NCBI RefSeq assembly: GCF_963676685.1
Contig: NC_092351.1
Coordinates: 81,530,001 to 81,594,000, forward strand
Reading direction: 5' to 3'
From: Mytilus edulis
Taxonomy: Eukaryota
DNA: 64,000 bases
The notes under the pieces were generated by a model that was given only the letters and a program-made list of their open reading frames with translations, had not been told where the DNA came from and searched no databases. Below are positions 59-62,437 of this stretch, in pieces. How positions within the stretch are numbered: the stretch's first letter is position 1; every line of letters starts with the position of its first letter. Both the position numbers and the translations under genes were made by a program.

Positions 59-3000
59 GACAATCGACTTTTGGCAAACTAAAAGAACACAGGTACATCC
101 AGTCAGAATGGGGCGTGTAAAGAGAAGCCACAGTGTCAGCTGCATGATGATTTTTTTCCATTTTTTGCCACACACCAATGTTGTTCTCGAAAAACCAGTA
201 CAATGTAAAAGTAAAGAATTCAACTATGGAACGCTGAAAACTAAAATTTGAAAGTCAAGAAAAATAAGAACCGAAAAAAATTGAAGAGGTTTTGGCCAAA
301 GTGAAGTTAAAACATACCAAAATCCATCTATAAGGGCTACTTTGACCGAGAGAGTTGGATCCTAAGTTTCTTCGTAATTTGTACGTAAACAACCTATTTT
401 AAATTATCTATTTTTTGTTGCCAGTGACGCATATTTCATGAATGTTCCGGAACAAATTAGCAATAAATACAACAGGGAGAGAGTGTGCATAATGAAGACA
501 TAACCTTTCAATCAGTTTAATTGAGGTCTGGAACTGGCGTATGGCAGTAACTGCTAGCTTTATATATAGTATATATTAGTCCTTTGTTAATTTATTATCA
601 TTGTCATTTTGATCAGTTTCGTTTGTTTCCTATTCTGACATAGGACTTGTATTTCCTTTTCAAGTGCGTTTTACTGTTCGTATTACTGTGTGTTTTTAAT
701 TCTTTATTGGCTAGAGGTATAGAGGAGGGTTGTGATCTCACGAAACATGTTTAACCCCGTCGCATTTGTGCGCCTGTCCCAATTCAGAAGCCTCTGTCCT
801 TTTAAGTCTTGTATGATTTTAATTTTAGTTCATTGTTATATTTCGAAGTTTAGTATGACGTCTATAATCACTGAACCAGTACACTTTATTGTCTAGGGGC
901 CAGCTGAAGCGCGCCTAGCACAACGTTCATTGCGACGCTATACATTAAGTACTCCTTCCGTGTTATTTCTTGGAACTGAAATAAATCATAAAAGGCAATA
1001 TATTATCGTCATGCAATCGATAAAAAAGAAAACAAAACGTTTAAAGCTGCATGCGACCGAATCGCTTTTTCTGGATCTACCTTCATCAGGAACATCAAAA
1101 AGGCGAATAATACTATTTGGTTTACTGAGAGTTGGTCAGTTTTCACTGTTACTTCTAAATGTTGGGCACTGGGAACACCAAATAGCTCTGAATTATTTAT
1201 CTCAAACGGTAACCTTATATAAGAGATTTAAATCAACTTATTAATTCCGGTTTAAATAGGTTTAACAAATTTTTTTTTGATAGTTGCACAACCATAAAAT
1301 TTCAGGATACTGTTATCCCATGTGATGTCTAATATGTTTTATATATATAAAAAAAAAAAGCTTCTTCTTTCCATCATTTATTTTGTAATTAAAAATGATT
1401 TGATATATTTTGTGCTATTTATTTATAACTAAGAATGATTGTTATCAGAGCCGTGTTTACATCAGTGTTTACAGGTACCCCTCTTTTCGCCCCTTTTCTA
1501 TTTTTGATATTTTAATCAAAAATTTAAAAAATCAAACTTTCAAAAAGTGAAATAATCAAAATTGCACGTTAGGTTTAGTATTTTAAAAGTTTGATAAAAT
1601 TCCTAAACTATCAAATTTATAAACGATATTTAGAATTTTAATATTTTGATAATTTGGTTAAAATTTCAAAATTTCAAAACTTTTACACAATTTGAAATTT
1701 TGATATTTTAAAACTTTGATCAAAATTCCAAAAATCTAAAGTTTCAAAACTTTTTAAAACTTTGAAATGATAAGTGTTACACGGACCAGTAAGACACATG
1801 GTATATAAAATTTGTAATATAAATAAAATGATTGACAGCTTCAAGACCTTCAACTAATATTGGAAATTGATCACGTTACAGTTTTATCCAATGAAATGGA
1901 AGCTCGCGCAAGTCACTTTTGCGCTTCGTGTATGATCGTCTGTATATTTCATGTAATAGAACCCCTGAATTTGCAGAAAGTAAAGAATGTCGGATTTTCC
2001 CGATTTTTTTTTTTAGTTTTGCGCCCCCTGTATGATTGTAGGCGCAGGTAATTTCATAATGTCATCAGACTGTAGTGGCGGATCCAGGGGGGAGGGGTTC
2101 CGGGGGTTGGAACCCCCCTTTTTTTTTGCCGATCAATGCATTTGAATGGGAGCATATAGTTGGAATCCCCCCCACCCCCTTTTACTCTGGGTTGGGACCC
2201 CCCCCCCCCCCCCCACCCCTTTTTTTAAATGGCTGGATCCGCCACTGGACTGAGGTAAACAAAAATGTCGGATTCCAGCGACAAGGATTAAACAATTATT
2301 CTAATGACGGTGAGAATTAGTTTTTTTTTTCAATGTATCATACAGATTAATCATACTTTACAGAATTTTCATCTAATTGAAAAATGCTTTTCTTCTGTTA
2401 TTTTATTAGATTATTTATTAAAACACAATTTTAATGATAAAACAATATTTTAACAGTGGCGGATCCAGGAGCGTGGAAAGTGTACGTCCCCTAATCATGT
2501 TTTTTTCACAGATATTTGTAGCCGATATTTATTCCTTTTGTATAGATACCCCCTTTTTAAATCGAAATTTAATTGAATTTTCGCAAAGGAAATGATAGTT
2601 TTACATTTTATTTTTTTCAAAACTGAAAGAAGAAACATTTAGTAATTTTCCAAAATTAAGGGAATTCGTAACAATCCTTTATAGTTTGAAAAGGGTTTCT
2701 TGAAATGTGGTACACATAATTTATTGCTTTTTCTTATAAAATGAAAACAAACGAAGACTTGACCTTTTATAGTACGTTTTACAGTTTCCTAATTATTTTA
2801 AAGGCGGATACATTTAAAAAAAAAAAAAAAAGGTGGAGCTTCAGCCATGGAATAACATGAAAATGAATATGCTATACCATGGCTGAAGCTCCGCCTTTTT
2901 TCCTTTGGATTCTAGTCGAGCTGCATATTTAATTAGCAAAGTATGGTACAACATAAATTTGCATATAATATACCATGGTTTTCCCTCACCACACTTTTCA

Positions 3001-3633
3001 AGCCAATTGTTTCATAAAAACATCAAAGGAAAAAATCCAATTTATGTTACAACATAGAAAACTACATACTGAGCAAGTGCAACATGAAACTAAAAATAGG
3101 TACAACATAGAAAAGTACATACTGAGCAAGCGCAACATGACTAAAAATAGGCACAACACGAACTCAAACCAAAATACGGCGTCCTAAGCTATACAACGCC
3201 TCAATCAAATACTGAACAAGTCATATGTGCTTATGATGGACTGCTTCCTTAAAAAAACGAAATGTATTATCCTTAGGATTGTAAGAGTTTCAGCTTTTTT
3301 TAATGATTCGCATGTTATTCTGAAATCTTGATAATTCAGATATGGTTCAAACAAACTTATAGTTTTTACATATTTTTCATGTGGAAGTTTTATATAAATA
3401 CGACTGTACGATATGATTTTTTTCTCATTGTTGAAGGCCTTATGGTTAATTATCAGAGAGAACGTCAAACTCATAAGTAACAAAGCAATCAGGAGCTCCG
3501 GATAATGAAAAATATGAAATCACTTACCTCGTATATTCTTTATACTATTACATCCTACAAGCACCACTAGGGCTGCACACAGGAATGTAAATTCTACAAT
3601 ATATTTTAAAAAATTAAAGATACCCTCCTTCAT
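59..3633 (-). CDS. Speculative 5' part of a secreted/membrane protein gene continuing off the left edge (candidate exons 3633-3528, 1964-1880, 1213-1126, 233-59)
   Basis: 3633-3528 reads MKEGIFNFLKYIVEFTFLCAALVVLVGCNSIKNIR (signal-peptide-like) and ends at a strong donor G|GTAAGT. The three downstream candidate exons chain in phase (1,2,0,1) without stops, but two donors and one acceptor are weak. No family recognised. Confidence 0.3.
486..920 (+). mobile_element. Non-autonomous, diverged copy of the Naiad PLE 3' UTR
   Basis: Matches the reverse complement of ~56035-56445 (atgaagacataa..tttcaatcagtttaattgaggtctgga..ggctagaggtata..tttaacccc..cctgtccc..gggccagctgaag). Starts within the 3' arm of the SECIS hairpin. 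Confidence 0.85.
1053..1095 (-). ncRNA. Degenerate minimal hammerhead-ribozyme-like motif (repeat-derived)
   Basis: Minus strand: gatgttc CTGATGA agg tagat cc a GAAA aagcgatt c ggtcgc. Core CUGANGA/GAAA present; stem III near-palindromic; stem I has mismatches. Confidence 0.4.
2073..2247. mobile_element. MITE with (C/T)AGTGGCGGATCCAG TIRs and 5-bp TSD GACTG (hAT-like ends)
   Basis: tagtggcggatccag ... ctggatccgccactg; gactg at 2068-2072 and 2248-2252. Confidence 0.85.
2827..2900. repeat. Short inverted repeat / hairpin
   Basis: aaaaggtggagcttcagccatgg ... ccatggctgaagctccgcctttt around a ~26-nt partly paired spacer. Confidence 0.75.
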
Positions 3634-4050
3634 GTTTTTCTTTGCCTTCGTATTTGAAAATGTATACACTGTTTGAAAAGGACAGGACTGATGGTAGCCT
3701 TTTTAGAGTTGACCAATTGCTAACACTGATCCAAAGCCTAAACGACACTTGAAGTACTTTCATTATGATATTCAGAAAAAATGTGAAAATGCACTGTGTT
3801 TGGTCGTCTTCTCTTAGTATTTTATAATCACATAAGCTACTAGTAGTGCTGTGTGGCCTTTTAATGTATATATATAGTTCAACATCTTAATAAATATATA
3901 CATAGGTACTCAACATGTATTACATAGAAAGAGTTATGCCTTTCCGTCATTGCTTAGGATAATTATGATTGATTAAAAATAAGGGTAACGATTTATATAA
4001 TGTCTTCTATGACGTTATGCTTAAGAAGTTTTGATAATGCAAATTAAGAT

Positions 4051-4336
4051 AAACAAGAATGTGTCCATAGTACACGGATGCCCCATCCGCACTTTATTTT
4101 TCTATATTCAGTTGTCCGTGAAAATGAGGTAAAATCTCTAATTTGGCATTAGAATTAGAAAATCATCATTTTGATATCATTTGGAACATGTGTACTAAGT
4201 TTTAAGTTGGTTCGACTTCAACTTCATCAAACACTACCCCGAACAAAAACTTTAACCTGAAGAGGAACAGACGAACGAACGATCAAACGGACGCACAGAC
4301 AAGAAAACATAATGCCCATAAATGGGACATAAAAAA
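4051..4336 (-). mobile_element. Helentron-associated (HINE/pearl-like) non-autonomous element
   Basis: acaagaatgtgtcc...ggatgccccatccgcact at one end, (GACG/GAAC)n-like microsatellite, terminal gcccataaatggg stem-loop and A-run. Homologous, oppositely oriented copy at 58631-58946. Confidence 0.7.
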
Positions 4337-4610: not shown

Positions 4611-5180
4611 AGGTGTATGTCCAGTAAGACCCCTTTTTGGCCCCAAAATATAGCAGTTTTACAAAATTGTTAAAATGGTTTATTTTGGTTATTTATTGGA
4701 TAGTAGAATGCTTCTGCTACATAAATATGGGCTGTTTTTGACAATACAATGCACATATATTGGGTACTAGCACCATGAAGTCATGCTAAATTACTGAAAT
4801 CTTCACAATTCTAGCATTTAAGTTAAATTTTATATGGTTTTCGTGTAAAACGGAAGTGGCCGCATTCGTGTTCATCCTTAATATTGAAATGCAAGTTGTA
4901 TTTTATGATAATACATAACGTATATAAAGGTTGAGGATAAACACGGATGCGGCCACTTTCATTTTTGACAAAAACCATCTGAAAAGTGACATTTTTCTGC
5001 ACATTTGGTAGATTTTTCATATTTGAGCTTGAATCAGATCATTTTTTCTGACTAAATCAGTCAAAATCGTTCACATTAACTTGAAATAGACACTTTTAAA
5101 AGTGTTTAAAAAGTGGTCAAAATCTTTCGTCAGATGAACCTGAAATTTGGCCAAAATCGGTCCATACCGGACCTACTTCT
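4611..5180. mobile_element. MITE with imperfect AGGAGTAGGTCCGGTAAG-type TIRs
   Basis: aggtgtatgtccagtaagacccctttttggcc ... ggccaaaatcggtccataccggacctacttct. Confidence 0.6.
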
Positions 5181-18300: not shown

Positions 18301-21300
18301 ATTTATCTCAAATTGCCAACAGAAACAAAGTTAAATGTGTACTTAACATTTTTGACTAAACCTATCAATCATAGCATTGTTTTTTAACCAATGGAAAAAA
18401 TCAACTGACAGTGGTGGATGATAATTTAAGAATGGCAGGGATCATTTAATGATGGCATAAGATAATTTAACATTGGTAGTGTGCCATCATGAAACAGTTC
18501 ATGGAGATCCCTGGTATGAACACCTTTGTTTATTTGAAGGAATTCTCAAGGACTTAATTGAAATAGACCTTACCATAGGGCTTAAGGGGGTACCTAACAC
18601 TACAGGGAGATAACTCTGTAAAATCAGCTAAACGTTTTAATTACGTTGTGTTGTTAATGGAATATTAAGCTTCTCAATGATCAAAATTAGTGTTTGTCAA
18701 ACTGCTATATACATGATATAACCAGTGTAATTTTTCTGATAAATTTGTTGGTTCAAATTTTTAGAAATTTTGATATTTTTGTCAAACGGTCAAAATAAAA
18801 ACTTTGTCAAAGTTTTATGAAAATTAAACGAGCCAAATTAATTTTAGTGAAAGTGTTGGGTACCACCTTAATGTCTCTTCATCTTCTTTTTTGAAGACTT
18901 ATGATTTATTATTTTCAGGTTATCACAGAATTTGAAAATTTACAAATTTTATATCTCCATGGAAACGTGATTAAGGATTTAAAAGAAATTGAGAAACTAA
19001 GTGTTATGAAAAGCTTAAGGAAGCTTACATTCCATGGCAATCCAGTAGAAAATTCTAAGGTAAATATATGAGTTGCCACGGTTATTGTTAAGATTATTGC
19101 AGGAACATATAACATCCATATTGTAATACTTGTGTCCTTTGTCAACGTCTTATTGTCAGTTACATTGCCTTGAACGAAAATTTTGATACATAAATAGTAA
19201 TCAAGATATATACAGTAAATTACACAAATATGAATGCACACAAATACACTTTACTGTTTGTTAAATTTTGTAAAAAAATTTCAACTTGAAAATAGACACA
19301 GGTATCTTCCTTGAGGGCAGATGGACACATCCTTTATCCGACATAAGTTTGCTCAAACAAATGAAACATGTATGACAGATTGTGTTTGAATTTGGTGGCA
19401 TCACCTAAAAGTTCTGGAGATGAGTTACGGGCCCCTTCATAACATTATGTGTGTCCAATGGATATATTCTTTATTTATTTTGTTAAGAATCTAAAGCCCC
19501 AGTCCCACTAGACCACGATCGCACCACGCTGATGAGGTGGTGAGGTCGCGGTATGAGCGGCATGAAAATGTTAATTTTCGTTGCTTTCACGATGCTACTA
19601 CGTCCTACCACGATTATACTACGTTCATACCGCGATCTTACTACGTTCTCAGCAATACCGTCAATATCGTGTTTCATATCAATATAGTTCCATGCCTTCT
19701 ATTTCTGATTAAAACGGAGATTTCTCGGAAACAATACAGTCATGCCACCAAAATCTACTAGAACACATGGGCGTGGTGGTAGGGGTTGATGTAGGGGCAG
19801 AGGGAGCAAAGAATGAACGCCATACTAAACTCCAAATAGTACACAAGAAACTAAAATTAAAAATAGTACAAGACTAACAAAGGCCAGAGGCTCCTGACTT
19901 GGGACAGGCGCAAAAATAGTGGGGTAAAACATGTTTGTGAGATCTCAACCCTCCCCCTATACCTCTAGCCAATGAAGAAAAGTAATCGCAGAACAATACG
20001 CACATTAAAATTCATTTTAAGAGAAGTCCGAGTCTGATGTCAGAAGATGTGACTAAAGAAAATAAACAAAATGACAATAATACATAAATAACAACAGACT
20101 ACTAGCAGTTAACTGACATGCCAGCTCCAGACTTCAATTAAACTGATACTATACACATAAGTAGTATAATACTTATCATCAAGAGATGTCGGAAAGACCA
20201 ATCAAACCTAAATTACAACCTATTGCTGGTCCATAAAGCTCAAATGACGAAATGTTAGTGAACCATAGCAGAGATGACACAGATGTGTCAATATATATAT
20301 AGGAAGATGTGGTATGAGTGCCAATGAGACAACTCTCCATCAACGTAAAAATCTATAAAAGTAAACCATTATAGGCCAATGTACGGCCTACAATACGGAG
20401 CCTTGGCTCACACCGAACAGCACGCTATAAAGGGCCCAAAAAATACTAATGTTAAACCATTTAAACGGGAAAAACCAACGGTCTATTCTATATAAAAACG
20501 AGAAGCATGGTTGAGTCGTTAGAGCAAATGGATAAATACATTCAAACAAACAAAATCTAGGGAGTTTTTTTTTATATATTTTATGTGAAAATGACAATAA
20601 AAATGATGGTCGTAGTGTGAACGTAGTAAGGTCGTGAGAAGAGCGTGATGAGGACTGCAAGGGGGTGCTAGAATCGTACTATGGGCGTGAACAGCGTGGA
20701 AAAGTCGTAGTGGAAGCGTAGTTGGGTCGCGGTGAGAACGTGATGGTCGTAGTAAGGTCGTAATAACGTCGCTGTGAGATCGTAGCACAATCTCTCCAAA
20801 TAGAATCACGCTCTCGCTACGATTGTACAGCGACCTTTGCGATCTTACTACGATCTTAGTGCGCTCTCACTAGGCTTATACTACGACCTAATTTCGCCAC
20901 GACCGCACCACGATTGTTTTGAACATGTTCAAAGTTGGTCACGCTCTTCACGATCTTGAAGACCTCACCACGACCGTGGTACGACCTTACTGCGACCTAC
21001 ACGATCGTACCACGATCATCAAAATTTCCATTTTTTTCACAGATCGTAGTGGGATCGTGGTCTAGTGGGACTAGGGTATAACGACTAGTAGATAAGCAAT
21101 TCTAATGCAACAACGTTTGCAACGTTCATTTTGATTGGATAACGTCACTTATTTACATGGCATCATTGACAATTGATGCTGTGGGACGTACACCCAAGCG
21201 CAGACGGCATATGACAGATTTTAAATACATGTTTTAACATTGTTTTCTATCAGTTTCATTAGAATGAAGATAACAATATTGTATTTTAAGCTCCAACTGC

Positions 21301-26914: not shown

Positions 26915-27360
26915 ATAATAAAATTGAGAATGGAAATGGGGAATGTGTCAAAGAGACAACAACCCGACCATAGAAAAAACAACAGCAGAAGGTCACCAAC
27001 AGGTCTTCAATGTAGCGAGACATTCCCGCACCCGGAAGGCGCCCTTCAGCTGGCCCCTAAACAAATATATACTTGTTCAGTGATAATGAACGCCATTCTA
27101 GTTTCCGAATTGTACACAAGAAACTAAAATTTAAAAAAAATACAAGACTAACAATTAAGGCCAGAGGCTCCTGACTTGGGACAGGCGCATAAATGCGGTG
27201 GGGTTAAACATGTTTATGAGATCTCAACCCTCCCCTATACCTCTAGTCAATGTAGAAAAGTAAATGCATAACAATACGCACATTAAAATTCAATTCAAGA
27301 GAAGTCCGAGTCTGATGTCAGAAGATGTAACCAAAGAAAATAAACAAAATGACAATAATA
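26915..27360 (-). mobile_element. Non-autonomous copy of the Naiad PLE 3' end
   Basis: Highly similar to 55925-56360, including the terminal ...ttctcaatttt. Confidence 0.88.
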
Positions 27361-27984
27361 CATTATATGATTTTTTGGTCATTTATAGCAAGATACATTA
27401 ATTAACATTTTGAATTGTTTTGATGATATTATATGACAAACCTAGATTTTTGAAGGTAGTAGGATTTCGGAAATCCAACTCAGAAAAATCTATTGCAGAA
27501 TATGTACAAAATGTAAACATAAAAATTATATATCTATCAAAGAACTTTAGCTCAGCAACATTCACCTCAAATATTTGTCCACAATGCCCTCTCGGAGACC
27601 ATGTTACATGTTATTAAATGCTATATTTAAATGAGAAAAAAAAGAACAAACATTAAAGAGTCATAATAGGTTAATACTGGGTTTTTAATATTGATTGACT
27701 ACTCTATGATTTTCAATTAACTTAAACTATTAATTCTATTGAACAATTATACTATAAACTATAAGAATGTGCTAGATATATACAAATCCCAGCAGACATG
27801 TGTGTCTATGTAAGTATTTCGATGTCAGAATATGAGACCAAGTGGTTTTAGTCTAAACATCGAGTCATGCATGATTGTATCCTGGATATTTCAAACCCTC
27901 CTACAATATAATCGAGACTATATATATCTAAACTTAGTGCAAAATAAGAGTTGTCTTCTCCAAGTGTGATGAGGTTTTGTTAGT

Positions 27985-53213: not shown

Positions 53214-54327
53214 CAGATCGACTTGGTCGTAAATGTGTCGTATGGATAGGGGCATTGGTCGGGTATGTACAATTTCAGCAAAAAAACGTCTGCAGCAGAA
53301 GAGGCATTAATTGTCACCATTGTCCGTCCGTGAGTACGTATACGTCTGTCCCAACAATTAGTTTCCGTTCTCTAATTTTATTTTGCCTCAAACTAATTTT
53401 ATAAAACGTATACACAATGCTTAAAAACACAGAGTAAGTGCGAATTAGGGTGGCGTTACTTCGTTTTTGGGTAATAACTCTTTATAACACTTTATGCCAG
53501 CAAGGATTTTATCTGTGTTCCATGGACACATTTCCCGTTTATTATGGTTAGATTTAGTAGTTCAGAGATGGTCTGAGTAAAAATATACATTAAAAATATT
53601 TACATGGGAATAAAGCAGTTGGATTATTTGGCAAGGTGGTTAGAGCTCAGATAGACAGGTTAATATAGCTGTGACGGAGGTTGAAGAGAGCGTAGAAGAA
53701 GAACAAAAAGGGTAGACAACAAAAGGAGTGGAGAAATATAGGTGATTCAGTGACTGAGTGTGTGGGCAGTATAAATTACAATCACAAAAATACTGAACTC
53801 CGAAGAAAATTAAAAACGGAAAGTACCTAATCAAATGACAAAATTAAAAGTATGAGAGATTATCAAGAGCTGAACAAAAAGGACCCCAATGGTTATAAAA
53901 ACTTCTTACAAGTAAAGTAAGACGCAGATTTAATTTTTTATGGGAGTTTTACTTCTTTTTTCTTCAAAATGTGATTTGTCACTGGATTAGAACTGATGTT
54001 AGATAGCAATATACATACATTTTACCATCCTCTTTTCCTTGCTTTTTTACAAATTAAGCATACATATACTGTTGGTGTCATATACAAGCATATGTATGTA
54101 ATCAGTAATCTCCATATATCTGATACACAGTAGTTGAATGATTCAAGATATTTCTTTTTGGTGTATCCATGGCTTCAACCAGTTTTGTTTAACTAATAAT
54201 ATTGCAAAAAGGGGTTAAAAATATTACATATTTTACCAAAATTTGTCAAAAGTAGAAACTGTTTACATAAATCTATCACGAATTCAAATAAAAATCATTC
54301 GTCTTTCGTCTCGTATTTTTTTTAATA

Positions 54328-54774
54328 TAGAATGAAATGCAAAACAGTGTGGCTGTGGCCATTGATTGACACATTAAATTCATCCATTGACTGGGACAAT
54401 TTAGGTGAACGTTTGTATGTAACGATCACTGCTCACTATGTACTTTTTAAAGACACTTAAACTATGGGGTCACCAAAGGTTCTCAACACCTTAATAAAGT
54501 AATTCGAAAAATTAATGAGAAATAACACGAAGTTTTGATTTATATCAATTATATAAATCAAAACATAAAGGTTATTCCTGATTAATTTTTCGAATTATTT
54601 TATAATTAAAGGCGTTAAGAAACCTTTGGTGACCCCACAGTTTAAATGTCTATCGTAGGTACGTCGTGAACAGTGGTCGTTACAGACAAACGTTCACGTA
54701 AATTGTCCCAGTCAGTGGATGAATTTAATGTGTCAATCAAAGGCCACAGCCACACTGTTTTGAATTTCATTCTA
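54328..54774. repeat. 447-bp whole-length palindrome (foldback MITE)
   Basis: Arms pair from tagaatgaaat..aaaacagtgtggctgtggcc to a centre at tatatcaattatata (~54548). Confidence 0.9.
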
Positions 54775-56431
54775 AAATTGCGTCAAAAAGCATACGAAAA
54801 AAATTGTTTGTTAACAATCGACCATACAGTGCCATGTATTTGTTAATTTCTGTGTCATTTGGTGTCCTGTTTGAGTTGTCCCATGAACAATAATACCATA
54901 CCTTTTTATTTTTATACAAAAAAAAATTCTGGACATACAAAAATAGCCCATTAAACAGGAAATATAATATTGAGGTTAAATAAGACATCAACTGTCAATG
55001 AAGAATTTAAATGCACAGTTAATTTCAAATTTGAAAACTCTTTTGGGGCCGAAATGCAGGACCAACTTCCCTTCCGGAACACTTGAGATCATCCCAGGTT
55101 TTAGTGGGTTTCGTGTTGCTAAGTTTTTAGTTTTCTATGTTGGGATATGTAGACTGCTGTGTGTCTTCTTGTCGGTTTTCCTTTTTCGCTTTGGCTGTGT
55201 CGGTTTGTTTTCGACCTATGAATTTGGTTGTTCCTTTGGTCTCTCTTTTGAAATTTTACACCTCCTTGCAAATGTACAGACCCGTACTGTACACAGAGGA
55301 ATTTGTGTACAGTTAAAACTAAAGTGACAATATATTTTTGCAGAAGCAAAGTTATGAGAGTTTATCAGAGCTGCACACATTTTTAGAGAATCGTGTAACA
55401 GTCATGTATACTCGAGTATGGCCGACTAGAGATCGAAGAGTGGTCGAATGTGGTCGCGTAGAGATCTGGTATTGGTCGAGTTGGTCTTGGATTAAAAACA
55501 TATAGAAGTCGTAGTGATCATGAAGCAATCGGGCATTGGTCGAGTTAATCAGGACCACATGTCGAATAGGTTGGCGTTGATCGGGAAATGATCGGATATT
55601 AGTCGACCAAAGATCGGAATGATCGAGTACTGATCGGTAAATTATGTGTATCCCAAGCTCGATCTCTACACGATCCTTTCCCGATCAATTCGACCGCTAC
55701 TCGACGAATTATCGATCTCTTCTCGAGTGACTAGATTGTTTTTGACATATAAAAACCTCTCGGGTAGAAAGACAGATGGATGGCGACCAAGGTAGCCTCC
55801 CACCCCCGAACATTTTTGTCGATTGGGTCAGACCGGTCTCCCGATCACTTAATTTGTCTTGATCGAGTTGGTCTGATCGGCTTAAAGCTGGGTGTACTGA
55901 TTGATATTTTAGTCTTTTAATTGTAAAATTGAGAAAGGAAATGGTGAATATGTCAAAGCGACAACCACCCGACCATAGAGCAAACAACAGCCGAAGGCAA
56001 CCAATGGGTCTTCAATGTAGCGAGAATTCCCGCACCCGTAGGTGTCCTTCAGCTGGCCCCTAAAATATGCATAATAGTACAGTGATAATGGACGTCATAC
56101 TAAACTCCGAATTATACACAAGAAACTAAAATTTAAAATCATACAAGACTAACAAAGGCCAGAGGCTCCTGACTTGGGACAGGCGCAAAATTGCGGCGGG
56201 GTTAAACATGTTTATGAGATCTCAACCCTCCCCCTATACCTCTAGCCAATGTAGAAAAGTAAAAGAATAACAATACGCACATTAAAATTCAGTTCAAGAG
56301 AAGTCCGAGTCTGATGTCAAAAGATGTAACAAAAGAAAATAAATAAAATGACAATAATACATAAATAACAACAGACTACTAGCAGTTAACTGACATGCCA
56401 GCTCCAGACCTCAATTAAACTGATTGAAAGA

Positions 56432-56520
56432 TTATGTCTTCATCATATGAATATCAGGTACAATCCCTCCCGTTAGGGGTTTAGTATCATACTATCATAA
56501 AATATATGAGAAGAACATAA
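56432..56520 (-). promoter_or_regulatory. SECIS element (type 2) in the Naiad 3' UTR
   Basis: Helix I ttatgttcttctcatat / atatgatgaagacataa; core ATGA (56498-56495) opposite TGAT (56456-56453); helix II gtatgat/attgtac; AAA 12 nt after ATGA; apical ministem ccc..ggg. Confidence 0.8.
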
Positions 56521-56562
56521 CCCGTGTCATGCCAACAACTGTTTTTTTAGAAGTAAATGTGT

Positions 56563-58320
56563 TTAGTTCCGATGCAAAGACCCTATCAGTGAATCAATGT
56601 TAAAGCCAAAATATGCAATCTTTAATGACCTGACAACAGTATCGTAACTATATCCCCTTTTAATAAGTCTATTTAAAGGTTTTGTTAGTTTCTGAGGAGA
56701 ATACTGACATTTTTGTGCTTTATAAAGAATATTTCCATAAAATTTTGGATGTGAAATACCTGAACGTATAAGATGTCTGCATGTTGAGTTATATTTACGA
56801 ATTATTTCCTTATACCGGTGATAAAATTTAGTAAATGTTTTGACCAGTTTGTGATATCGAAAACCCTGGTGTAATAATTTTTCAGTAATACATAAATTTC
56901 TCTCGCTAAAATCTAATACATTGTTACATACACGAGCGAATCGTACAAGTTGAGATATATAAACACCATAAGATGGTGACAAGGGAACGTCACCATCTAA
57001 AAATGGATAATTAACAATAGGAAATGAAAAATCATCTCTTTTATCATAAATTTTTGTATTAAGCTTCCCGTTTATGATATAGATATCAAGATCGAGGAAA
57101 GGGCAGTGGTCATTGTTATCATTAGCTTTATTTAAAGTAAGTTCTACAGGATAAATTTCTTTAGTATACATACTGAAGTCGTCATTATTTAGAGCCAATA
57201 TATCATCCAAATATCTAAAAGTATTGTTAAATTTTTGTATCAAATGTTGTTTTGATGGGTCTTTGCTAATTTTAGTCATAAATTGTAACTCATAACAATA
57301 CAAAAACAGGTCCGCAATAAGTGGTGCACAGTTAGTCCCCATTGGAATTCCAATAACTTGACGATATACGGAATCTCCAAAGCGAACAAAAATGTTATCA
57401 AGTAAAAATTCAAGTGCATAAATAGTATCAAAGCATGTCCAATTGACATAGTTCTTTTGTTTATTGCTACTAAAAAATGATCTAAAAGAGTTTGAACATA
57501 TGTACTCGCATTCCGACTTTTTAAATGCCCAGTTAATTAGGGATGTGAATTTTTTCTTAATAAGAATATGAGGCAAAGTGGTATATAGGGTAGAAAAATC
57601 AAAACTTTGAACAGATTCAAAATCACCAATATATGCATGCAATTTATCAAGTACTTCCAACGAGTTTTTGACACTCCAAAAGTAATTAATTCCACTATTT
57701 TCAAAGGCCTTATTTGAACAATTTATTATCAGGTTTTTTATTGTACCAAGTGTACTAGTAAGTAAAACAGACAATTTAGTAGTTGAACAATGGCTGGAAG
57801 ATGAAATAAATCTATATTTGTAAGGTTTTTTGTGCAGCTTCGGAAGCCAGTACATAGTTGGGACTTTCATTGTGTTTGGTTCTGCTTGTAAAGAAGTAGC
57901 TAAAAGTTTATGTTTGTTACAGATGTCGTTTTCTGAAAATGAAGTCAGTTGGAATGTTGGTGAATTCGTGATTTCCTTTTGCAGAACCTCTATATAAAAT
58001 TTACGTCAAACAATAATGATATTATTAGCAGCTTTATCAGCCGGGACAAAAACAAATTCCTTGGCTAGTTCTGTTAGTTTATTTTTGATACGCGAAATAG
58101 GGTTTTTATAGTTTTTGTTGAGGGTAAAATGTTCTTTAAAATGTTGTATTCGAATATCAACTATCTTCATTACTGAATTAATAAAAGAGTCCAAAGATTT
58201 TTTGTCAGCTTTTTCCCGTTTTACCCATTTCAAACAGTAGGCGCGGAGTGAGTCGTTGATGATATTACGACACTCATTCCAGTTAATAGTTGACGGGGGA
58301 CGATATTTAGGTCCTTTACT
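56563..58320 (-). CDS. Naiad PLE reverse transcriptase (5'-partial), probable selenoprotein with in-frame TGA at 58008-58006
   Basis: ORFs 58006-58410 and 56563-57870 are in the same frame, joined by NNIIIV-TGA-RKFYIEVLQKEI...; no other stop or frameshift in 586 codons. Confidence 0.8.
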
Positions 58321-58630
58321 GTGTTTGGCTTTGAACAAGCTATCAGTACTCTTAGATTTGTACTTTGCGTCTTTTGAGTTTTGAGAGATGTATAAAAAAC
58401 CATACCACATGTTGTCTGTGTTTTTATTTGATTTTTATCTGGTTTGTATCGATTTATTCAACTGATTCTTATTATTTTGGGTACATGCTTTCTCGTTCCA
58501 ACGCCGTCCAGGGTTAAAGACAGGGCTGGCGCCCTCCAACATGTTCAACCCCGCCACATTGTTGAAGTGCTTGTCCGAATTTTAATAGTTGTCATCGATT
58601 CATGTCTATCATGTTTGTTTTCCTTATTAT

Positions 58631-58946
58631 TTTTATGAACCATTTAAGGGCATCATGTTTTCTGGTCTGTGCGTCCGTTCGTCTGTTCGAAAGTGTTGAC
58701 CCAAATTTCAAGGTCCACTGAACATGGAAATTGATAGTGCGAACTTCAGGTTAAAGTTTTTGGTCAAGGTAGTTTTTGATGAAGTTGAAGTCCAATCAAT
58801 TTGAAACTTAGTACAATTGTTTCCTATGATATGATCTTTCTAATTTTATTGTCAAATTAGAGTTTTTATCCCATATTCACCGTCCACTGAACGTAGAAAA
58901 TTGTAGTGCGGATGGGGCATCTGTGTACTAGGGACACTTTCTTGTT
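58631..58946 (+). mobile_element. HINE/pearl-like element (family of 4051-4336)
   Basis: Reverse-complement homology to 4051-4336. Confidence 0.7.
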
Positions 58947-59423
58947 GGTTATGAATTTGGTATCCTGTTAAGAACATCATCCATTAGCTTGCCTTATTCT
59001 GTGATTAGATATTATACAGTTACATGAAACAGTTTTTAAAAATCAGTATCAAGTTAAAAACCATGTGAATAGCTTAATTGTTTAAAAAAAAAATATGCAT
59101 CAATTCAAACTTAATAATTTAGCCCTAACATGACTTATGAAACTTTCTCCTTTAGTCATATTAATATTTGTTTTAATCCCAACCTTTCACAATGTTTCTA
59201 TGTTTTACAGAGACATTCCGACTGATGTTTAGACGAACCAGCATGGTAGTAAAATACATCGTATTAATTTTCTTAGTTTTGGTTACTAATAAAGTTCATC
59301 CGACATTTGCATTAACCGGTAAGTTATTTTTATGACAATTAATTATGATAATCTTAGAATTAATTCCTTTCCCAACAATTTACGTATTTATTGAGGTTTC
59401 TATACTTTTATGGACGTCAAGTT

Positions 59424-59687
59424 GGTTACCTATTCCCTATTCCCTATTCGTTACCTATTCGTTACCTATTCCCTATTCCCTATTCGTTACCTATTCGTTA
59501 CCTATTCCCTATTCCCTATTCGTTACCTATTCGTTACCTATTCCCTATTCCCTATTCGTTACCTATTCGTTACCTATTCCCTATTCCCTATTCGTTACCT
59601 ATTCGTTACATATTCCCTATTCCCTATTCGTTACCTATTCGTTACTTATTCCCCATTCCCTATCGTTACCTATGCGTTACTTATTCG
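59424..59687. repeat. 36-bp minisatellite, (tcgttacctat)2(tccctat)2, about 7 copies
   Basis: Direct inspection; gives the 12-aa repeating spurious ORFs in three frames. Confidence 0.95.
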
Positions 59688-59718
59688 ATTTTTAATATCC
59701 TTCCCCCTTTTTAATTAA

Positions 59719-62437
59719 TTATGGCACCCTCAACGGAGTTGGGGTGACATATTGTTATTCTACGTTTCTTTTTATGGCACCCTCAACGGAGTTGGGGTGA
59801 CGTATTGTTATTCTACGTTTCTTTTTATGGCACCCTAAACGGAGTTTGGGTGACATATTGTTATTCTACGTTTCTTTTTGTTTTTATTTTTATTATTATT
59901 TTTCTTCCACACATTTTTGTCCAGTCTGGAACTCTAATGTGAATGGACCCAAGAAGATGGAACTATACCATAATGTTAACCACCAGATGAAGATTTGCTT
60001 TTTGGGGGTGGCACTTTCAAGATGGCTGCCGTTACCATGGAAACGGAACAAATGTGAAAAAATCCCGTTTTTTGTTTTGGGGAACTATTTGGATACTATT
60101 TAACTCAGAATCATTATATTTTAATACAATGTAGGTGCCCACTATATACAGGTGTTGGATGATTTTGGCACTCATTGGAACTACTATGTTGCCATGGAAA
60201 CTTCTCCAAAAAATTCAAAAATCTCAAAATGTTCCAAACTTAATGAAACTTCACAGTAACGATGAGCAACATTGGAAGATGTGGAATTTGGCGTTGGAAT
60301 TTCCAAAATCGCTCTTGTTACCATGGAAAAATGCAAAAAGGTCAAAACTTTGAATTTTCACAGAACATTCTAGAACATCAATGTTTAATTTATTCTAGAG
60401 ACATTAAATGGTATATGATTGTGGAGGGAAAAAATTGCAGCGGGGGTTTGACTTTGGAATATTCAAAATGGCCGCCGTTACCATGGAAACAGCAAAAATA
60501 CGAAAAAATTCAAAATGCTTCAAATTTATTGAAACTTATAACAAATGTTGCTCAGCTAATGTAGACTTGACTTTTGAGTTTGGAATTTCCAAAATGGCCG
60601 CCGTTACCATGGCTACCGCTCACCTGGCAATAGGGGAAGGGTGCCATCCGCTATTGCTTGCAATCGCAAATCTAGTTTTTCTTATTATTTTTATTAATCT
60701 TCTTCCACACTTTTTGTCCACGCTAGTTCTCAGAATCTAATAGGTCAATGATGATGGAACTCTACTATAATAAGGACCCCCATATGAAGTTGTGCATCTT
60801 GCTATGGAATGGTTTAAGATGGCCACCGTTTCCATGGAAACAGAACAAATTCCAGTTTTTGGTTTTGGTGAACTGTTTGGATATGCTTTAACTCAGAATC
60901 ATTATATTTTAATACAATGTAGGTGCCCACTATATACAGGTGTTGGGTGATTTTGGCACTCATTGGAACTACTATGTTGCCATGGAAACAACACCAAAAA
61001 TCTCAAAATGCTCCAAACTATCTGAAACTTCACAAAAACGATGAGCAACATTAGAAGATGTGGCATTTGGAGTTGGAATTTCCAAAATAGCTATCGTTAC
61101 CATGGAAACAATGCAAAAAGGTCAAAAATTTCAAAAAAAAATAAAAATGCTGCAAACTGGATGAAACTTGACATAAATGGTCACTGGCATAAACAGATTT
61201 GACTTTTGAAGTTGGAATTTTTCAAATGGCCTCCGTTACCATGGAAACAGAAAAATCGTTCAAAATATCAAAATGCTCCAAACTTAATAAAACTTCACAG
61301 TAACGATTAGCAACATTGGAAGATGTAAATTTTAAAGTTTGAATTTTCAAAATGGCCGCCGTAACCATAGAAACAGCTAAAATATCCAAAATTTCAAAAT
61401 GCTCCCATCTTAATGAAACTTTACAAAAATGATCATTTGAATGTGTAGATGCACTCTTTGACTTTGGAATCTTCTAGATTGTTGCCGCTCGCCTATCAAT
61501 AGGGGAAGGGTGCCATCCGCTATTGCTTGCAATGGCAAATCTAGTTTTTCTTATTTTTCTTCCACACATTTTGTCCGCGCGAGTTCTTGGAATCCTAGCG
61601 ACCAATGTTGATGGAACTCTACTATAATGAGGACCACCATCTGAAGTTGTGCACCTTGCTATGGAATGGTAAAAAATGGCCGCCGTTTCCATGGAAACGG
61701 CACAAATGCGAAAAAAATCAAAGTGGTCCAAACAGGAAGAAACTCCTCAGGAATGTTAACTAGCATGTGCTGATTTCCAGTTTGACTTTGGAATTTTCAA
61801 AATGGCTGCCGTTACCATGGAAACAGCTAAAATATCAAAAATTCTAACTCTTTCGTTATAAGATCCAACTGGATGAAACTTTATGAAAATGTTCTCCAGT
61901 ATGCCAAGTTGTCAAGACAATATTTGGATAGTTCAAAATGGCCGACGTTGTCATGGAAACTGGGGCCAAGTTTTGCATTGACCCTATGGAAAAATGCATA
62001 AAATCAGCATTTTCTCAAAGAGCAGTGCACCAAAGTAAATGAAACTGTATTGATATATAACATGACATGTGACAATGAGATGTCTGCTTTTAGAATTTTG
62101 GAATTATCTACTGTAACCATGGTTGCAGCACAAATGTTCAAAATTTCCAAAAAAAATTAAGTGCTGCAAACTGGATGAAACTTTACAGGAATAGTGACTG
62201 ACATGTGCGGAGCTGCATTTTGAAGTTGGAATTTCCAAAATGGCCGCCGTAACCATGGAAACAGCAAAATTGTCCAAAATTTCAAAATGCTCCAAACTTA
62301 ATGAAATTTTGCAAAAATGATAACTTGCAGGTGTAGATGCACTCTTTGACTTCGGAATTTCCAAAATGGCTGCCGCTCGCCTGGCAATGGGCGAACGAGG
62401 GTGCCATCCGTTATTGCTAGCAATTACAAATCTAGTT
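59719..62437 (+). mobile_element. Tandem array of Helentron/HINE-like elements (three 5' heads, three bodies with 3' ends)
   Basis: 53-bp heads with atggcaccct + stem-loop x3; bodies rich in ccgttaccatggaaac; 3' ends agggtgccat + hairpin + ctag at 60672, 61541 and 62432. Confidence 0.8.

What the first reader, a model, noticed from the sequence alone, without database searches (positions are those of the whole stretch)
56563..58320. Retrotransposon RT with a single in-frame UGA at a conserved Cys position: probable selenocysteine-encoding Naiad element
Seen: the two ORF-track fragments form one frame, broken only by TGA at 58008-58006 (FVFVPADKAANNIIIV*RKFYIEVL); the other 584 sense codons have no stop or frameshift. 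Established: in this RT family the motif usually reads DKAxNNxxxVCKxxY, so the TGA replaces a Cys; the Naiad clade of Penelope-like elements has been reported to use UGA-Sec. Inference: the element depends on host Sec machinery, which could tie retrotransposition to selenium availability. The clade-level phenomenon is known; this copy and the role of Sec in the RT N-terminal extension may not be described.
Basis: partly seen in the sequence, partly recalled or inferred. Interest (0 to 1): 0.9.

Follow-up and report, generated by a model that had tools for sequence, protein, structure and literature searches.

The report
Selenocysteine-coding Naiad retrotransposon, truncated copy
This is a dead, front-truncated copy of a very young, high-copy "Naiad" retrotransposon whose intact copies appear to read four UGA stop codons as selenocysteine, a trick published in 2021 for clams and spiders and here extended to a mussel-type genome and many marine relatives.

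Summary
Window 58320..56563 (minus strand) is one frame of 584 sense codons, one TGA (58008-58006) and a terminal TAA.

- This copy is 5'-truncated (window 58321..55924). It lacks the start codon and the endonuclease, so it is dead.
- Full-length copies (4.03 kb period, 190-bp pseudo-LTRs) carry a 1002-codon ORF with four in-frame stops, all TGA.
- The site 8 residues after DKA is already described as UGA in Craig et al. 2021.

Main evidence for selenocysteine:
- All four TGAs sit in columns that are Cys in 33-34 of 34 full-length relatives.
- TGA was present in every young copy examined (33/33 at this codon).
- An older subfamily copy (dS 0.27) keeps the TGA, with omega 0.29 upstream and 0.12 downstream.
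- About 40 marine-metagenome relatives at 36-63% protein identity also keep it.
- A SECIS lies about 55 nt after the stop. It is the only SECIS hit in the 64-kb window, and its structure covaries across 16 diverged elements.
- SECIS presence tracks TGA-bearing elements (18/25 against 1/24).
- The host has tRNA-Sec and SepSecS.

Relatives carry 1-5 TGAs, including a fifth site in the CxC motif. This scan had already found the family elsewhere in this genome. No RNA or protein evidence could be obtained.

The parts
55924..58321 (-). 5'-truncated copy (2398 bp) of a young Naiad Penelope-like retroelement. It corresponds to positions 1819-4216 of a 4220-bp full-length copy.
   Evidence: blastn to a full-length copy gave 99.92% identity over 2398 bp. 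Other copies share the same 3' end but have different 5' truncation points.
56566..58320 (-). ORF remnant, codons 418-1002 of the 1002-codon EN-RT ORF. It holds the GxKF/Y motif (KGPKYR), the DKA motif and the RT core (YLDD). It has no start codon, no GIY-YIG endonuclease and no CxC motif.
   Evidence: Translation and alignment to 34 full-length relatives.
58006..58008 (-). In-frame TGA, codon 522 of the full ORF and 8th residue after DKA. Predicted selenocysteine codon.
   Evidence: Cys in 34/34 relatives. TGA in 33/33 young copies, in the older subfamily copy L064 and in 40 metagenome loci.
56563..56565 (-). Terminal TAA stop codon of the ORF.
   Evidence: The same TAA is kept in the older subfamily.
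56444..56508 (-). SECIS element in the 3' UTR, about 55 nt after the stop. It has an AUGA core, an AAA bulge, a GA on the 3' side and a small apical helix (type-II-like).
   Evidence: Rfam SECIS_1 scored 30.9 bits (gathering score 35). It is the only SECIS hit in the 64-kb window. Fold. Own covariance models scored 71.3 and 67.6 bits. Covariation.
55924..56109 (-). 3'-terminal 186 bp, homologous to the 190-bp pseudo-LTR that brackets full-length and tandem copies.
   Evidence: blastn gave 99.5% identity to the 5' pseudo-LTR of full-length copies.

Best explanation
The window holds a dead-on-arrival, 5'-truncated insertion of a recently active, high-copy Naiad (N-terminal GIY-YIG endonuclease plus RT) Penelope-like retrotransposon. 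The family encodes a selenoprotein. Its single 1002-codon ORF has four UGA codons: the 2nd Cys of the CX4CxxC finger, the Cys before GIY, the first Cys of CCHH, and the Cys 8 residues after DKA. These are read as selenocysteine by the host machinery (tRNA-Sec, eEFSec, SBP2), directed by one SECIS about 55 nt after the UAA stop. Shown here: the anatomy, the Cys/UGA correspondence, conservation of UGA under purifying selection, a covarying SECIS that tracks the UGA-bearing lineages, and host tRNA-Sec and SepSecS genes. Inferred, not shown: that Sec is actually inserted, that one SECIS serves all four UGAs processively, and that element activity depends on selenium supply. The truncated window copy keeps only the fourth UGA and the SECIS and does nothing by itself.
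For: (1) The copy is truncated at 58321. Full-length copies have 190-bp pseudo-LTRs and a 4030-bp tandem period. (2) The full ORF runs from its Met to TAA over 1002 codons, with four internal stops, all TGA. Copies covering each site have TGA in 21/21, 24/24, 25/25 and 33/33 cases. Sixteen copies span the whole ORF in one frame, and 14 of them have no other stop or indel. (3) The four columns are Cys in 33-34 of 34 relatives of 28-37% identity. Only nine Cys columns are conserved in the whole protein. (4) An older subfamily copy (91.7% nucleotide identity, dS 0.27) keeps TGA-522 and the TAA stop. Nei-Gojobori omega is 0.29 over the 146 codons upstream and 0.12 over the 480 codons downstream of the TGA. 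(5) In 80 metagenome loci, TGA occupies column 522 in 40, and 116 of the 164 in-frame stops seen are TGA at five conserved Cys columns. (6) The SECIS is the only SECIS_1 hit in 64 kb. Rfam hits fall in the same place in 6 diverged relatives. Across 16 elements, 93.5% of cells pair and 17 of 18 pairs show double-sided changes. None of 500 shuffles reaches this, and slid controls pair at 37-51%. (7) A SECIS is found in 18/25 assessable TGA-bearing loci against 1/24 Cys-only loci. (8) All TGA-bearing elements form one clade with SH-aLRT 98. (9) The host has five tRNA-Sec genes scoring at least 77 bits, and SepSecS exons. (10) The site pattern matches published Naiad selenoproteins (PMC8557442).
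Against: Rfam's SECIS_1 score (30.9 bits) is below the curated gathering score of 35. The covariation counts come from alignments fitted to my own model, and 7 of the 16 sequences trained it. The loci are phylogenetically related, so the Fisher test overstates independence. Seven TGA-bearing loci gave no significant SECIS. Young copies are near-identical, so their unanimity alone says little. The upstream omega rests on one older copy. An intact Cys-type Naiad family coexists in the genome, so trans-mobilisation is physically possible.
Confidence: 0.9

Rival explanations
1. The TGA is an ordinary nonsense mutation, either private to this copy or inherited from one broken master, and the frame downstream is a decaying pseudogene.
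For: Cys codons (TGT/TGC) turn into TGA by one transversion. The young copies are 99.3-99.9% identical, so their shared TGA could be a single event.
Against: TGA sits at the same column in an older subfamily with dS 0.27 and in 40 loci of 36-63% protein identity. All four internal stops are TGA at conserved Cys columns, and there is no TAA or TAG. Omega downstream is 0.12. A SECIS follows the stop.
Confidence: 0.01
2. The UGA-bearing family is non-autonomous. Its UGAs terminate translation, and its thousands of copies are made in trans by the intact Cys-type Naiad family of the same genome.
For: A Cys-type Naiad family with uninterrupted ORFs of about 1000 aa and many copies is present in this genome.
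Against: A passenger would not keep a 1002-codon frame free of other stops, nor omega 0.12-0.29 on both sides of the UGA. It would not keep the UGA/Cys correspondence across a whole clade. It would not keep a covarying SECIS tied to the UGA-bearing lineages.
Confidence: 0.04
3. The UGAs are bypassed without selenocysteine, either by near-cognate read-through (Trp, Cys or Arg) or by re-initiation at a downstream Met giving an RT-only product. The hairpin after the stop would then have another role.
For: No direct evidence of Sec insertion. An in-frame Met lies 46 codons after the fourth UGA. The SECIS score is below Rfam's cut-off.
Against: The hairpin has the full AUGA / AAA / GA SECIS signature, kept through compensatory changes in 16 diverged elements. 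It is absent from Cys-only relatives. UGA is found only at Cys columns, as expected for Cys/Sec exchange. Re-initiation would not explain the three UGAs inside the endonuclease.
Confidence: 0.05

Closest known systems
Naiad selenoprotein families of clams (Naiad_Scon, Naiad_Mmer; Craig et al. 2021, PMC8557442)
   Same: Same architecture: N-terminal GIY-YIG endonuclease, CxC linker, DKA motif, RT and pseudo-LTRs. UGA sits at the Cys before GIY-YIG, at the first Cys of CCHH and at the Cys 8 residues after DKA. A SECIS lies in the 3' UTR close to a UAA/UAG stop. The hosts are bivalves.
   Different: The host here is a mussel-type genome, which the paper does not list as having a Sec family. The fourth UGA is the second Cys of the CX2-5CxxC finger, a site the paper reports only in a spider family; Naiad_Scon's fourth is in RT6(D). 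The SECIS lies about 55 nt after the stop, against 1-21 nt in the paper. The published sequences were not on hand, so direct relatedness was not tested.
Naiad selenoprotein families of spiders (Naiad_Sdum, Naiad_Smim)
   Same: UGA in the CX2-5CxxC finger, at the Cys before GIY-YIG and after DKA; three or four UGAs per ORF.
   Different: The paper says these arose independently of the clam families. It also says spider Naiads lack the IFD. The hosts are arthropods.
Cys-type Naiads (for example the extended Penelope-2_CGi of oysters, and the intact Cys-type family in this genome)
   Same: Same domain order, the same nine conserved Cys columns, high copy numbers in bivalves, 5' truncation and pseudo-LTRs.
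   Different: All nine columns are TGT/TGC and no SECIS was detected (0 of 23 clear Cys-type loci).
Selenoprotein P (multi-Sec host selenoprotein; Baclaocos et al. 2019, as cited in PMC8557442)
   Same: Several UGAs in one ORF must be decoded processively as Sec from 3'-UTR SECIS elements. It is especially Sec-rich in bivalves.
   Different: It is a host gene, not a mobile element, and is unrelated in sequence. Its Sec residues are mostly in a C-terminal Se-transport tail rather than at conserved Cys of enzyme domains.

Membership tests
Naiad clade of Penelope-like elements | Single ORF with the GIY-YIG endonuclease N-terminal to the RT | tested here: met
   Full-length copies carry ...SIIYLLT[U]NKPGCGIQYVGETG... 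at codons 90-110 and the RT (YLDD) in the C-terminal half. Aligned relatives P0009, P0011, P0016 and P0026 hit Pfam GIY-YIG PF01541 over its cut-off at their N-termini. The window copy itself has lost this part by truncation.
Naiad clade of Penelope-like elements | CX2-5CxxC and CCHH Zn-finger-like motifs in the endonuclease | tested here: met
   C-x4-[U]-x2-C lies at codons 50-58. Conserved Cys columns 86, 97 and 102 are followed by His residues.
Naiad clade of Penelope-like elements | CxC motif in the linker, followed by GxKF/Y | tested here: met
   SCNC lies at codons 384-387 and KGPKYR follows; both Cys are invariant in alignment A1. Only GPKY survives in the window copy (58320 onward).
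Naiad clade of Penelope-like elements | DKG motif of PLEs modified to DKA | tested here: met
   PADKAANN is in the window copy, and DKA is in all 34 aligned relatives.
Naiad clade of Penelope-like elements | Insertion-in-fingers domain (about 20 extra residues between RT3(A) and RT4(B)) | tested here: inconclusive
   About 84 residues separate the FDF motif from GIPMG in the translation. No canonical PLE was aligned for comparison.
Naiad clade of Penelope-like elements | Pseudo-LTRs, partial tandem insertions and frequent 5' truncation | tested here: met
   A 190-bp repeat brackets full-length copies. Head-to-tail copies have a 4030-bp period (L031, L032). Truncation points range from 319 to 1819 with a common 3' end.
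Naiad clade of Penelope-like elements | No canonical hammerhead ribozyme | tested here: met
   No Hammerhead family hit in 54000-61000 at E<=10, nor in the whole window at E<=1.
Naiad clade of Penelope-like elements | Insertion bias for (TA)n or other microsatellites (a tendency, not strictly defining) | tested here: not met
   None of about 29 young copies has a microsatellite at its 3' junction.
Naiad clade of Penelope-like elements | Phylogenetic placement with named Naiad reference families | not testable with these tools
   The paper's consensus sequences (supplementary file S1) are not held. Only unnamed database relatives could be used.
Eukaryotic selenoprotein gene | In-frame UGA aligned with Cys in homologues | tested here: met
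   All four UGAs align to columns that are Cys in 33-34 of 34 relatives.
Eukaryotic selenoprotein gene | SECIS with AUGA / AA / GA core in the 3' UTR | tested here: met
   Rfam SECIS_1 scored 30.9 bits (below the gathering score of 35) and is the only hit in 64 kb. The structure is supported by covariation in 16 diverged elements. The core is kept in both subfamilies.
Eukaryotic selenoprotein gene | UGA and the downstream frame conserved under purifying selection | tested here: met
   Omega is 0.12 downstream and 0.29 upstream at dS 0.27. TGA is kept in 40 diverged loci.
Eukaryotic selenoprotein gene | Host has the Sec machinery | tested here: met
   Five tRNA-Sec genes score 77-80 bits, and SepSecS exons lie on contig C4. 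SBP2, eEFSec, PSTK and SPS2 were not searched.
Eukaryotic selenoprotein gene | Sec incorporation demonstrated | not testable with these tools
   This needs 75Se labelling, mass spectrometry or ribosome profiling.

The most novel reading that the evidence does not exclude
Sec-coding Naiads may be one large marine radiation rather than four odd families. In it, selenocysteine has replaced between one and five of the protein's nine conserved cysteines, always one Cys of a motif (UxxC, UxC, U...C). This includes the first Cys of the CxC motif, a site not reported in 2021, and Cys/Sec have switched repeatedly. In this genome thousands of young copies each carry a working SECIS. Truncated insertions like this one would then scatter SECIS elements that could found new host selenoprotein genes, and the family's activity would be gated by selenium supply.
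Probability: 0.3. Interest if true: 0.7.

Novelty: new member of a known kind. Interest (0 to 1): 0.45.

Why it matters
Selenoprotein-encoding transposons were first reported in 2021 from four families. This finding shows the same system in a genome where it is young and present in thousands of copies. The follow-up also shows a whole clade of such elements in marine metagenomes, with a graded series of 1-5 Sec codons.

Three consequences follow.
- It gives a natural series for asking why Sec replaces particular cysteines in the endonuclease, linker and RT motifs.
- It gives annotators a practical warning: these ORFs are split at UGA and called as fragments. Database proteins end exactly at the UGA columns.
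- It identifies a plentiful genomic source of ready-made SECIS elements.

The claim that retrotransposition is coupled to selenium status would be new biology, but it is untested.

Tried and rejected
- Pfam on the ORF pieces of the element found nothing significant. Domain identity had to come from alignment to relatives and from Pfam hits on those relatives.
A second family in this genome, with one TGA inside the region homologous to P0001, and the Cys-type family therefore could not be read.
- The paper's supplementary consensus sequences are not held.
- Covariation between the young and old subfamily SECIS alone was uninformative: four one-sided changes, two of them structure-preserving.
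- The first MAFFT alignments of SECIS elements mis-registered helix I. This was corrected by aligning to a covariance model.
- No microsatellite target preference was seen.
- A private nonsense mutation, trans-mobilised passenger status and non-Sec read-through were considered and judged unlikely (see rival explanations).
Stops were read as X in scripts only.

Full report
OBSERVATION. On the minus strand, window 58320..56563 is a single reading frame of 584 sense codons. It is interrupted once by TGA at 58008-58006 (...PADKAANNIIIV[TGA]RKFYIEVL...) and closed by TAA at 56565-56563.

WHAT THIS COPY IS. A DNA search of the window's own genome (1.37 Gb; window = contig C8:81530001-81594000) found more than 4,000 first-look candidates. 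The 40 that were scored were about 100% identical from window 58321 downward. Comparison with a full-length copy shows that the window copy spans 58321..55924 (2398 bp, 99.92% identical) and matches positions 1819-4216 of a 4220-bp element.

Full-length copies are bracketed by a 190-bp direct repeat (pseudo-LTR) and occur head-to-tail with a 4030-bp period. Other copies share the 3' end but are cut at many different 5' positions. The window copy is therefore a 5'-truncated, dead-on-arrival insertion. It has no start codon, no endonuclease and no CxC linker. The apparent ATG at 58410 lies in flanking host DNA.

THE INTACT ELEMENT. In full-length copies the same frame runs from a Met to the TAA over 1002 codons and contains four internal stops, all TGA:
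- codon 55, in C-HAKK-[U]-LT-C;
- codon 86, just before the GIY motif;
- codon 97, in IIYLLT[U]NKPGCGIQYVGET;
- codon 522, the one in the window.

Among the young copies fetched, every copy covering a site has TGA there (21/21, 24/24, 25/25, 33/33). Sixteen copies span the whole ORF in one frame, and 14 of those have no other stop or indel.

CYS CORRESPONDENCE. A HMMER search of 1.84 billion representative proteins with the 424-residue piece between the third and fourth TGA found 2,741 relatives. I aligned 34 full-length relatives (28-37% identity) to the ORF, reading each TGA as X. The four X columns are Cys in 33, 34, 34 and 34 of them.

The whole protein has only nine conserved Cys columns: 50, 55, 58, 86, 97, 102, 385, 387 and 522. 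Four random codons would all fall in those nine columns with probability of about 6.5e-9. The closest database proteins (40-54% identity, four separate clusters) all end exactly at the residue before column 522. This is what a gene caller does at a stop codon.

CONSERVATION OF THE UGA. An older subfamily copy in the same genome (L064, 91.7% nucleotide identity) keeps TGA-522 and the TAA stop and has no frameshift. Nei-Gojobori estimates against the young family are as follows.

| Segment | Codons | dS | Omega | One-sided p |
|---|---|---|---|---|
| Upstream of the TGA | 146 | 0.29 | 0.29 | 3e-4 |
| Downstream of the TGA | 480 | 0.26 | 0.12 | 8e-22 |

The frame beyond the UGA was therefore under protein-level selection while the UGA was retained.

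A scan of metagenome contigs returned 80 loci. tblastn with the X-joined ORF shows TGA at column 522 in 40 loci of 36-63% protein identity. The more distant relatives have TGT/TGC at all columns. Of the 164 in-frame stops inside all alignments, 116 are TGA at five conserved Cys columns. Most of the rest lie in a few visibly decayed contigs.

SECIS. Rfam finds one SECIS_1 match in the entire 64-kb window. It lies at 56508..56444 on the element's strand, about 55 nt after the TAA (30.9 bits against a gathering score of 35). It folds into the expected long helix, AUGA/GA internal loop, AAA bulge and small apical helix.

Rfam also hits the same place in 6 of 15 diverged TGA-bearing loci, against 1 of 16 loci with Cys at column 522. 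I built a covariance model from seven of these and found nine more. On the 16-sequence alignment:
- 93.5% of cells form standard pairs;
- 17 of 18 pairs show double-sided changes;
- none of 500 shuffles reaches the observed values;
- sliding the partner by 1-3 columns drops pairing to 37-51%.

The alignment is fitted to the model, which favours the structure.

A second model found four further elements. In most families the SECIS starts at the second base of the terminal TAA/TAG. In the window's family it sits 53-57 nt downstream. Among loci where the ORF end and at least 150 nt downstream are present, 18 of 25 TGA-bearing loci have a SECIS, against 1 of 24 Cys-only loci. Fisher's test gives 8e-7, but the rows are related and not independent. 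The single exception, L139, is a truncated contig of the window family's closest relative (78% identity). Its upstream Cys columns are not visible.

PHYLOGENY AND SITE PATTERNS. In a maximum-likelihood tree of residues 400-925 (50 rows, quick IQ-TREE search), every TGA-bearing element falls in one clade (SH-aLRT 98), sister to Cys-only clades.

Within that clade the number of TGA codons ranges from one (column 522 only) to five. Column 522 is almost always U, then 97, 86, 385 and 55 in falling frequency. The fifth column, the first Cys of the CxC motif (position 385), is TGA in 28 loci but Cys in the window's family. The main text of the 2021 paper does not mention this site.

Two relatives (L110, L143) have U at 385 but Cys at 522. 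The window family's nearest relative, L139, also has Cys at 522. Cys/Sec exchange has therefore gone both ways or happened repeatedly.

HOST CONTEXT. The genome has five tRNA-Sec genes scoring 77-80 bits, and SepSecS exons. It also holds a Cys-type Naiad family with uninterrupted ORFs of about 1000 aa. A second family related to database protein P0001 has one TGA inside the linker region.

I did not verify the species. The genome size and 14 large contigs are compatible with it, from my own knowledge.

MECHANISM AND RIVALS. The best-supported reading is that the element's mRNA is translated through four UGAs as selenocysteine under the control of its own 3'-UTR SECIS. This yields an endonuclease-RT protein with Sec at one cysteine of each of four Cys motifs. 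The truncated window copy is a by-product.

A private or master-copy nonsense mutation is excluded by the deep conservation. Trans-mobilisation of a broken passenger conflicts with omega 0.12-0.29, the clean frame and the covarying SECIS. Non-Sec read-through or re-initiation cannot be excluded without experiments, but it leaves the SECIS and its tight association with UGA unexplained.

COMPARISON WITH WHAT IS KNOWN. Craig, Yushenova, Rodriguez and Arkhipova (2021, PMC8557442) defined Naiads and reported selenoprotein families in two clams and two spiders, with three or four UGAs. The sites they list are the Cys before GIY-YIG, the Cys 8 residues after DKA, the first Cys of CCHH (clams) and the CX2-5CxxC finger (spiders). 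Their SECIS elements lie 1-21 nt after the stop. The present family meets the testable Naiad criteria; the IFD test was inconclusive and no microsatellite target bias was seen. It uses the three 'clam' sites plus one 'spider' site.

Compared with that paper, four things are new:
- the host;
- this combination of sites;
- the size of the Sec clade;
- the fifth (CxC) site in relatives.

I found no later open-access paper on the subject. This scan had already reported the same family from another part of this genome (s1-830508), and another note marks the SECIS of this window (s1-834724). Both agree with what I tested independently.

LIMITS. Copy numbers are rough lower bounds.

Noticed in passing
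metagenome loci L066, L067, L070-L072, L076, L077, L081-L087 and others (column = residue 385 of the window family's ORF): A fifth recurrent in-frame TGA replaces the first Cys of the Naiad CxC motif ([U]xC) in 28 loci. Elements L076, L077, L082 and L083 thus carry five TGAs at conserved Cys columns. The main text of the 2021 paper does not mention this site. The window's family has Cys here.
   Followed up: partly
own genome, e.g. C10:55717572-55718549, C1:34555947-34556924: A second Naiad family in the same genome is 60% identical to database protein P0001 and has one TGA inside the linker region. It may be the CxC-site Sec.
   Followed up: no
own genome, e.g. C12:30942048-30944729: A Cys-type Naiad family with uninterrupted ORFs of about 1000 aa and very many candidates (38,292 at first look) coexists with the Sec-type family.
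   Followed up: no
window 19812-20147 and 26917-27363 (minus strand): Two older 3'-end fragments of a related subfamily (92% and 89% identity to the young family). That subfamily also has thousands of candidates genome-wide.
   Followed up: partly
window 59400-59720: Tandem repeat built on units like TAACGAATAGG / GAATAGGG, about 1.1 kb upstream of the truncated copy. It is not adjacent to the insertion junction.
   Followed up: no
own genome C10:14401393-14442259 and contig C945: A long tandem array (895-bp period, at least 47 units) of a tRNA-like gene scores 45.9 bits against the tRNA-Sec model, just under its 47-bit cut-off. It is probably another long-arm tRNA in a satellite-like array.
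   Followed up: no
window 4829-4983: A hairpin matches the plant MIR161 model on both strands (43 and 32 bits, far below the gathering score of 90). It is most likely a palindromic repeat or MITE, not a miRNA.
   Followed up: no
L139:1856-1977: The closest relative of the window family (78% protein identity) has TGT (Cys) at column 522 yet keeps a good SECIS 55 nt after its stop. Either it is a recent Sec-to-Cys reversion at this site, or Sec is retained only at upstream sites that lie off the contig.
   Followed up: partly
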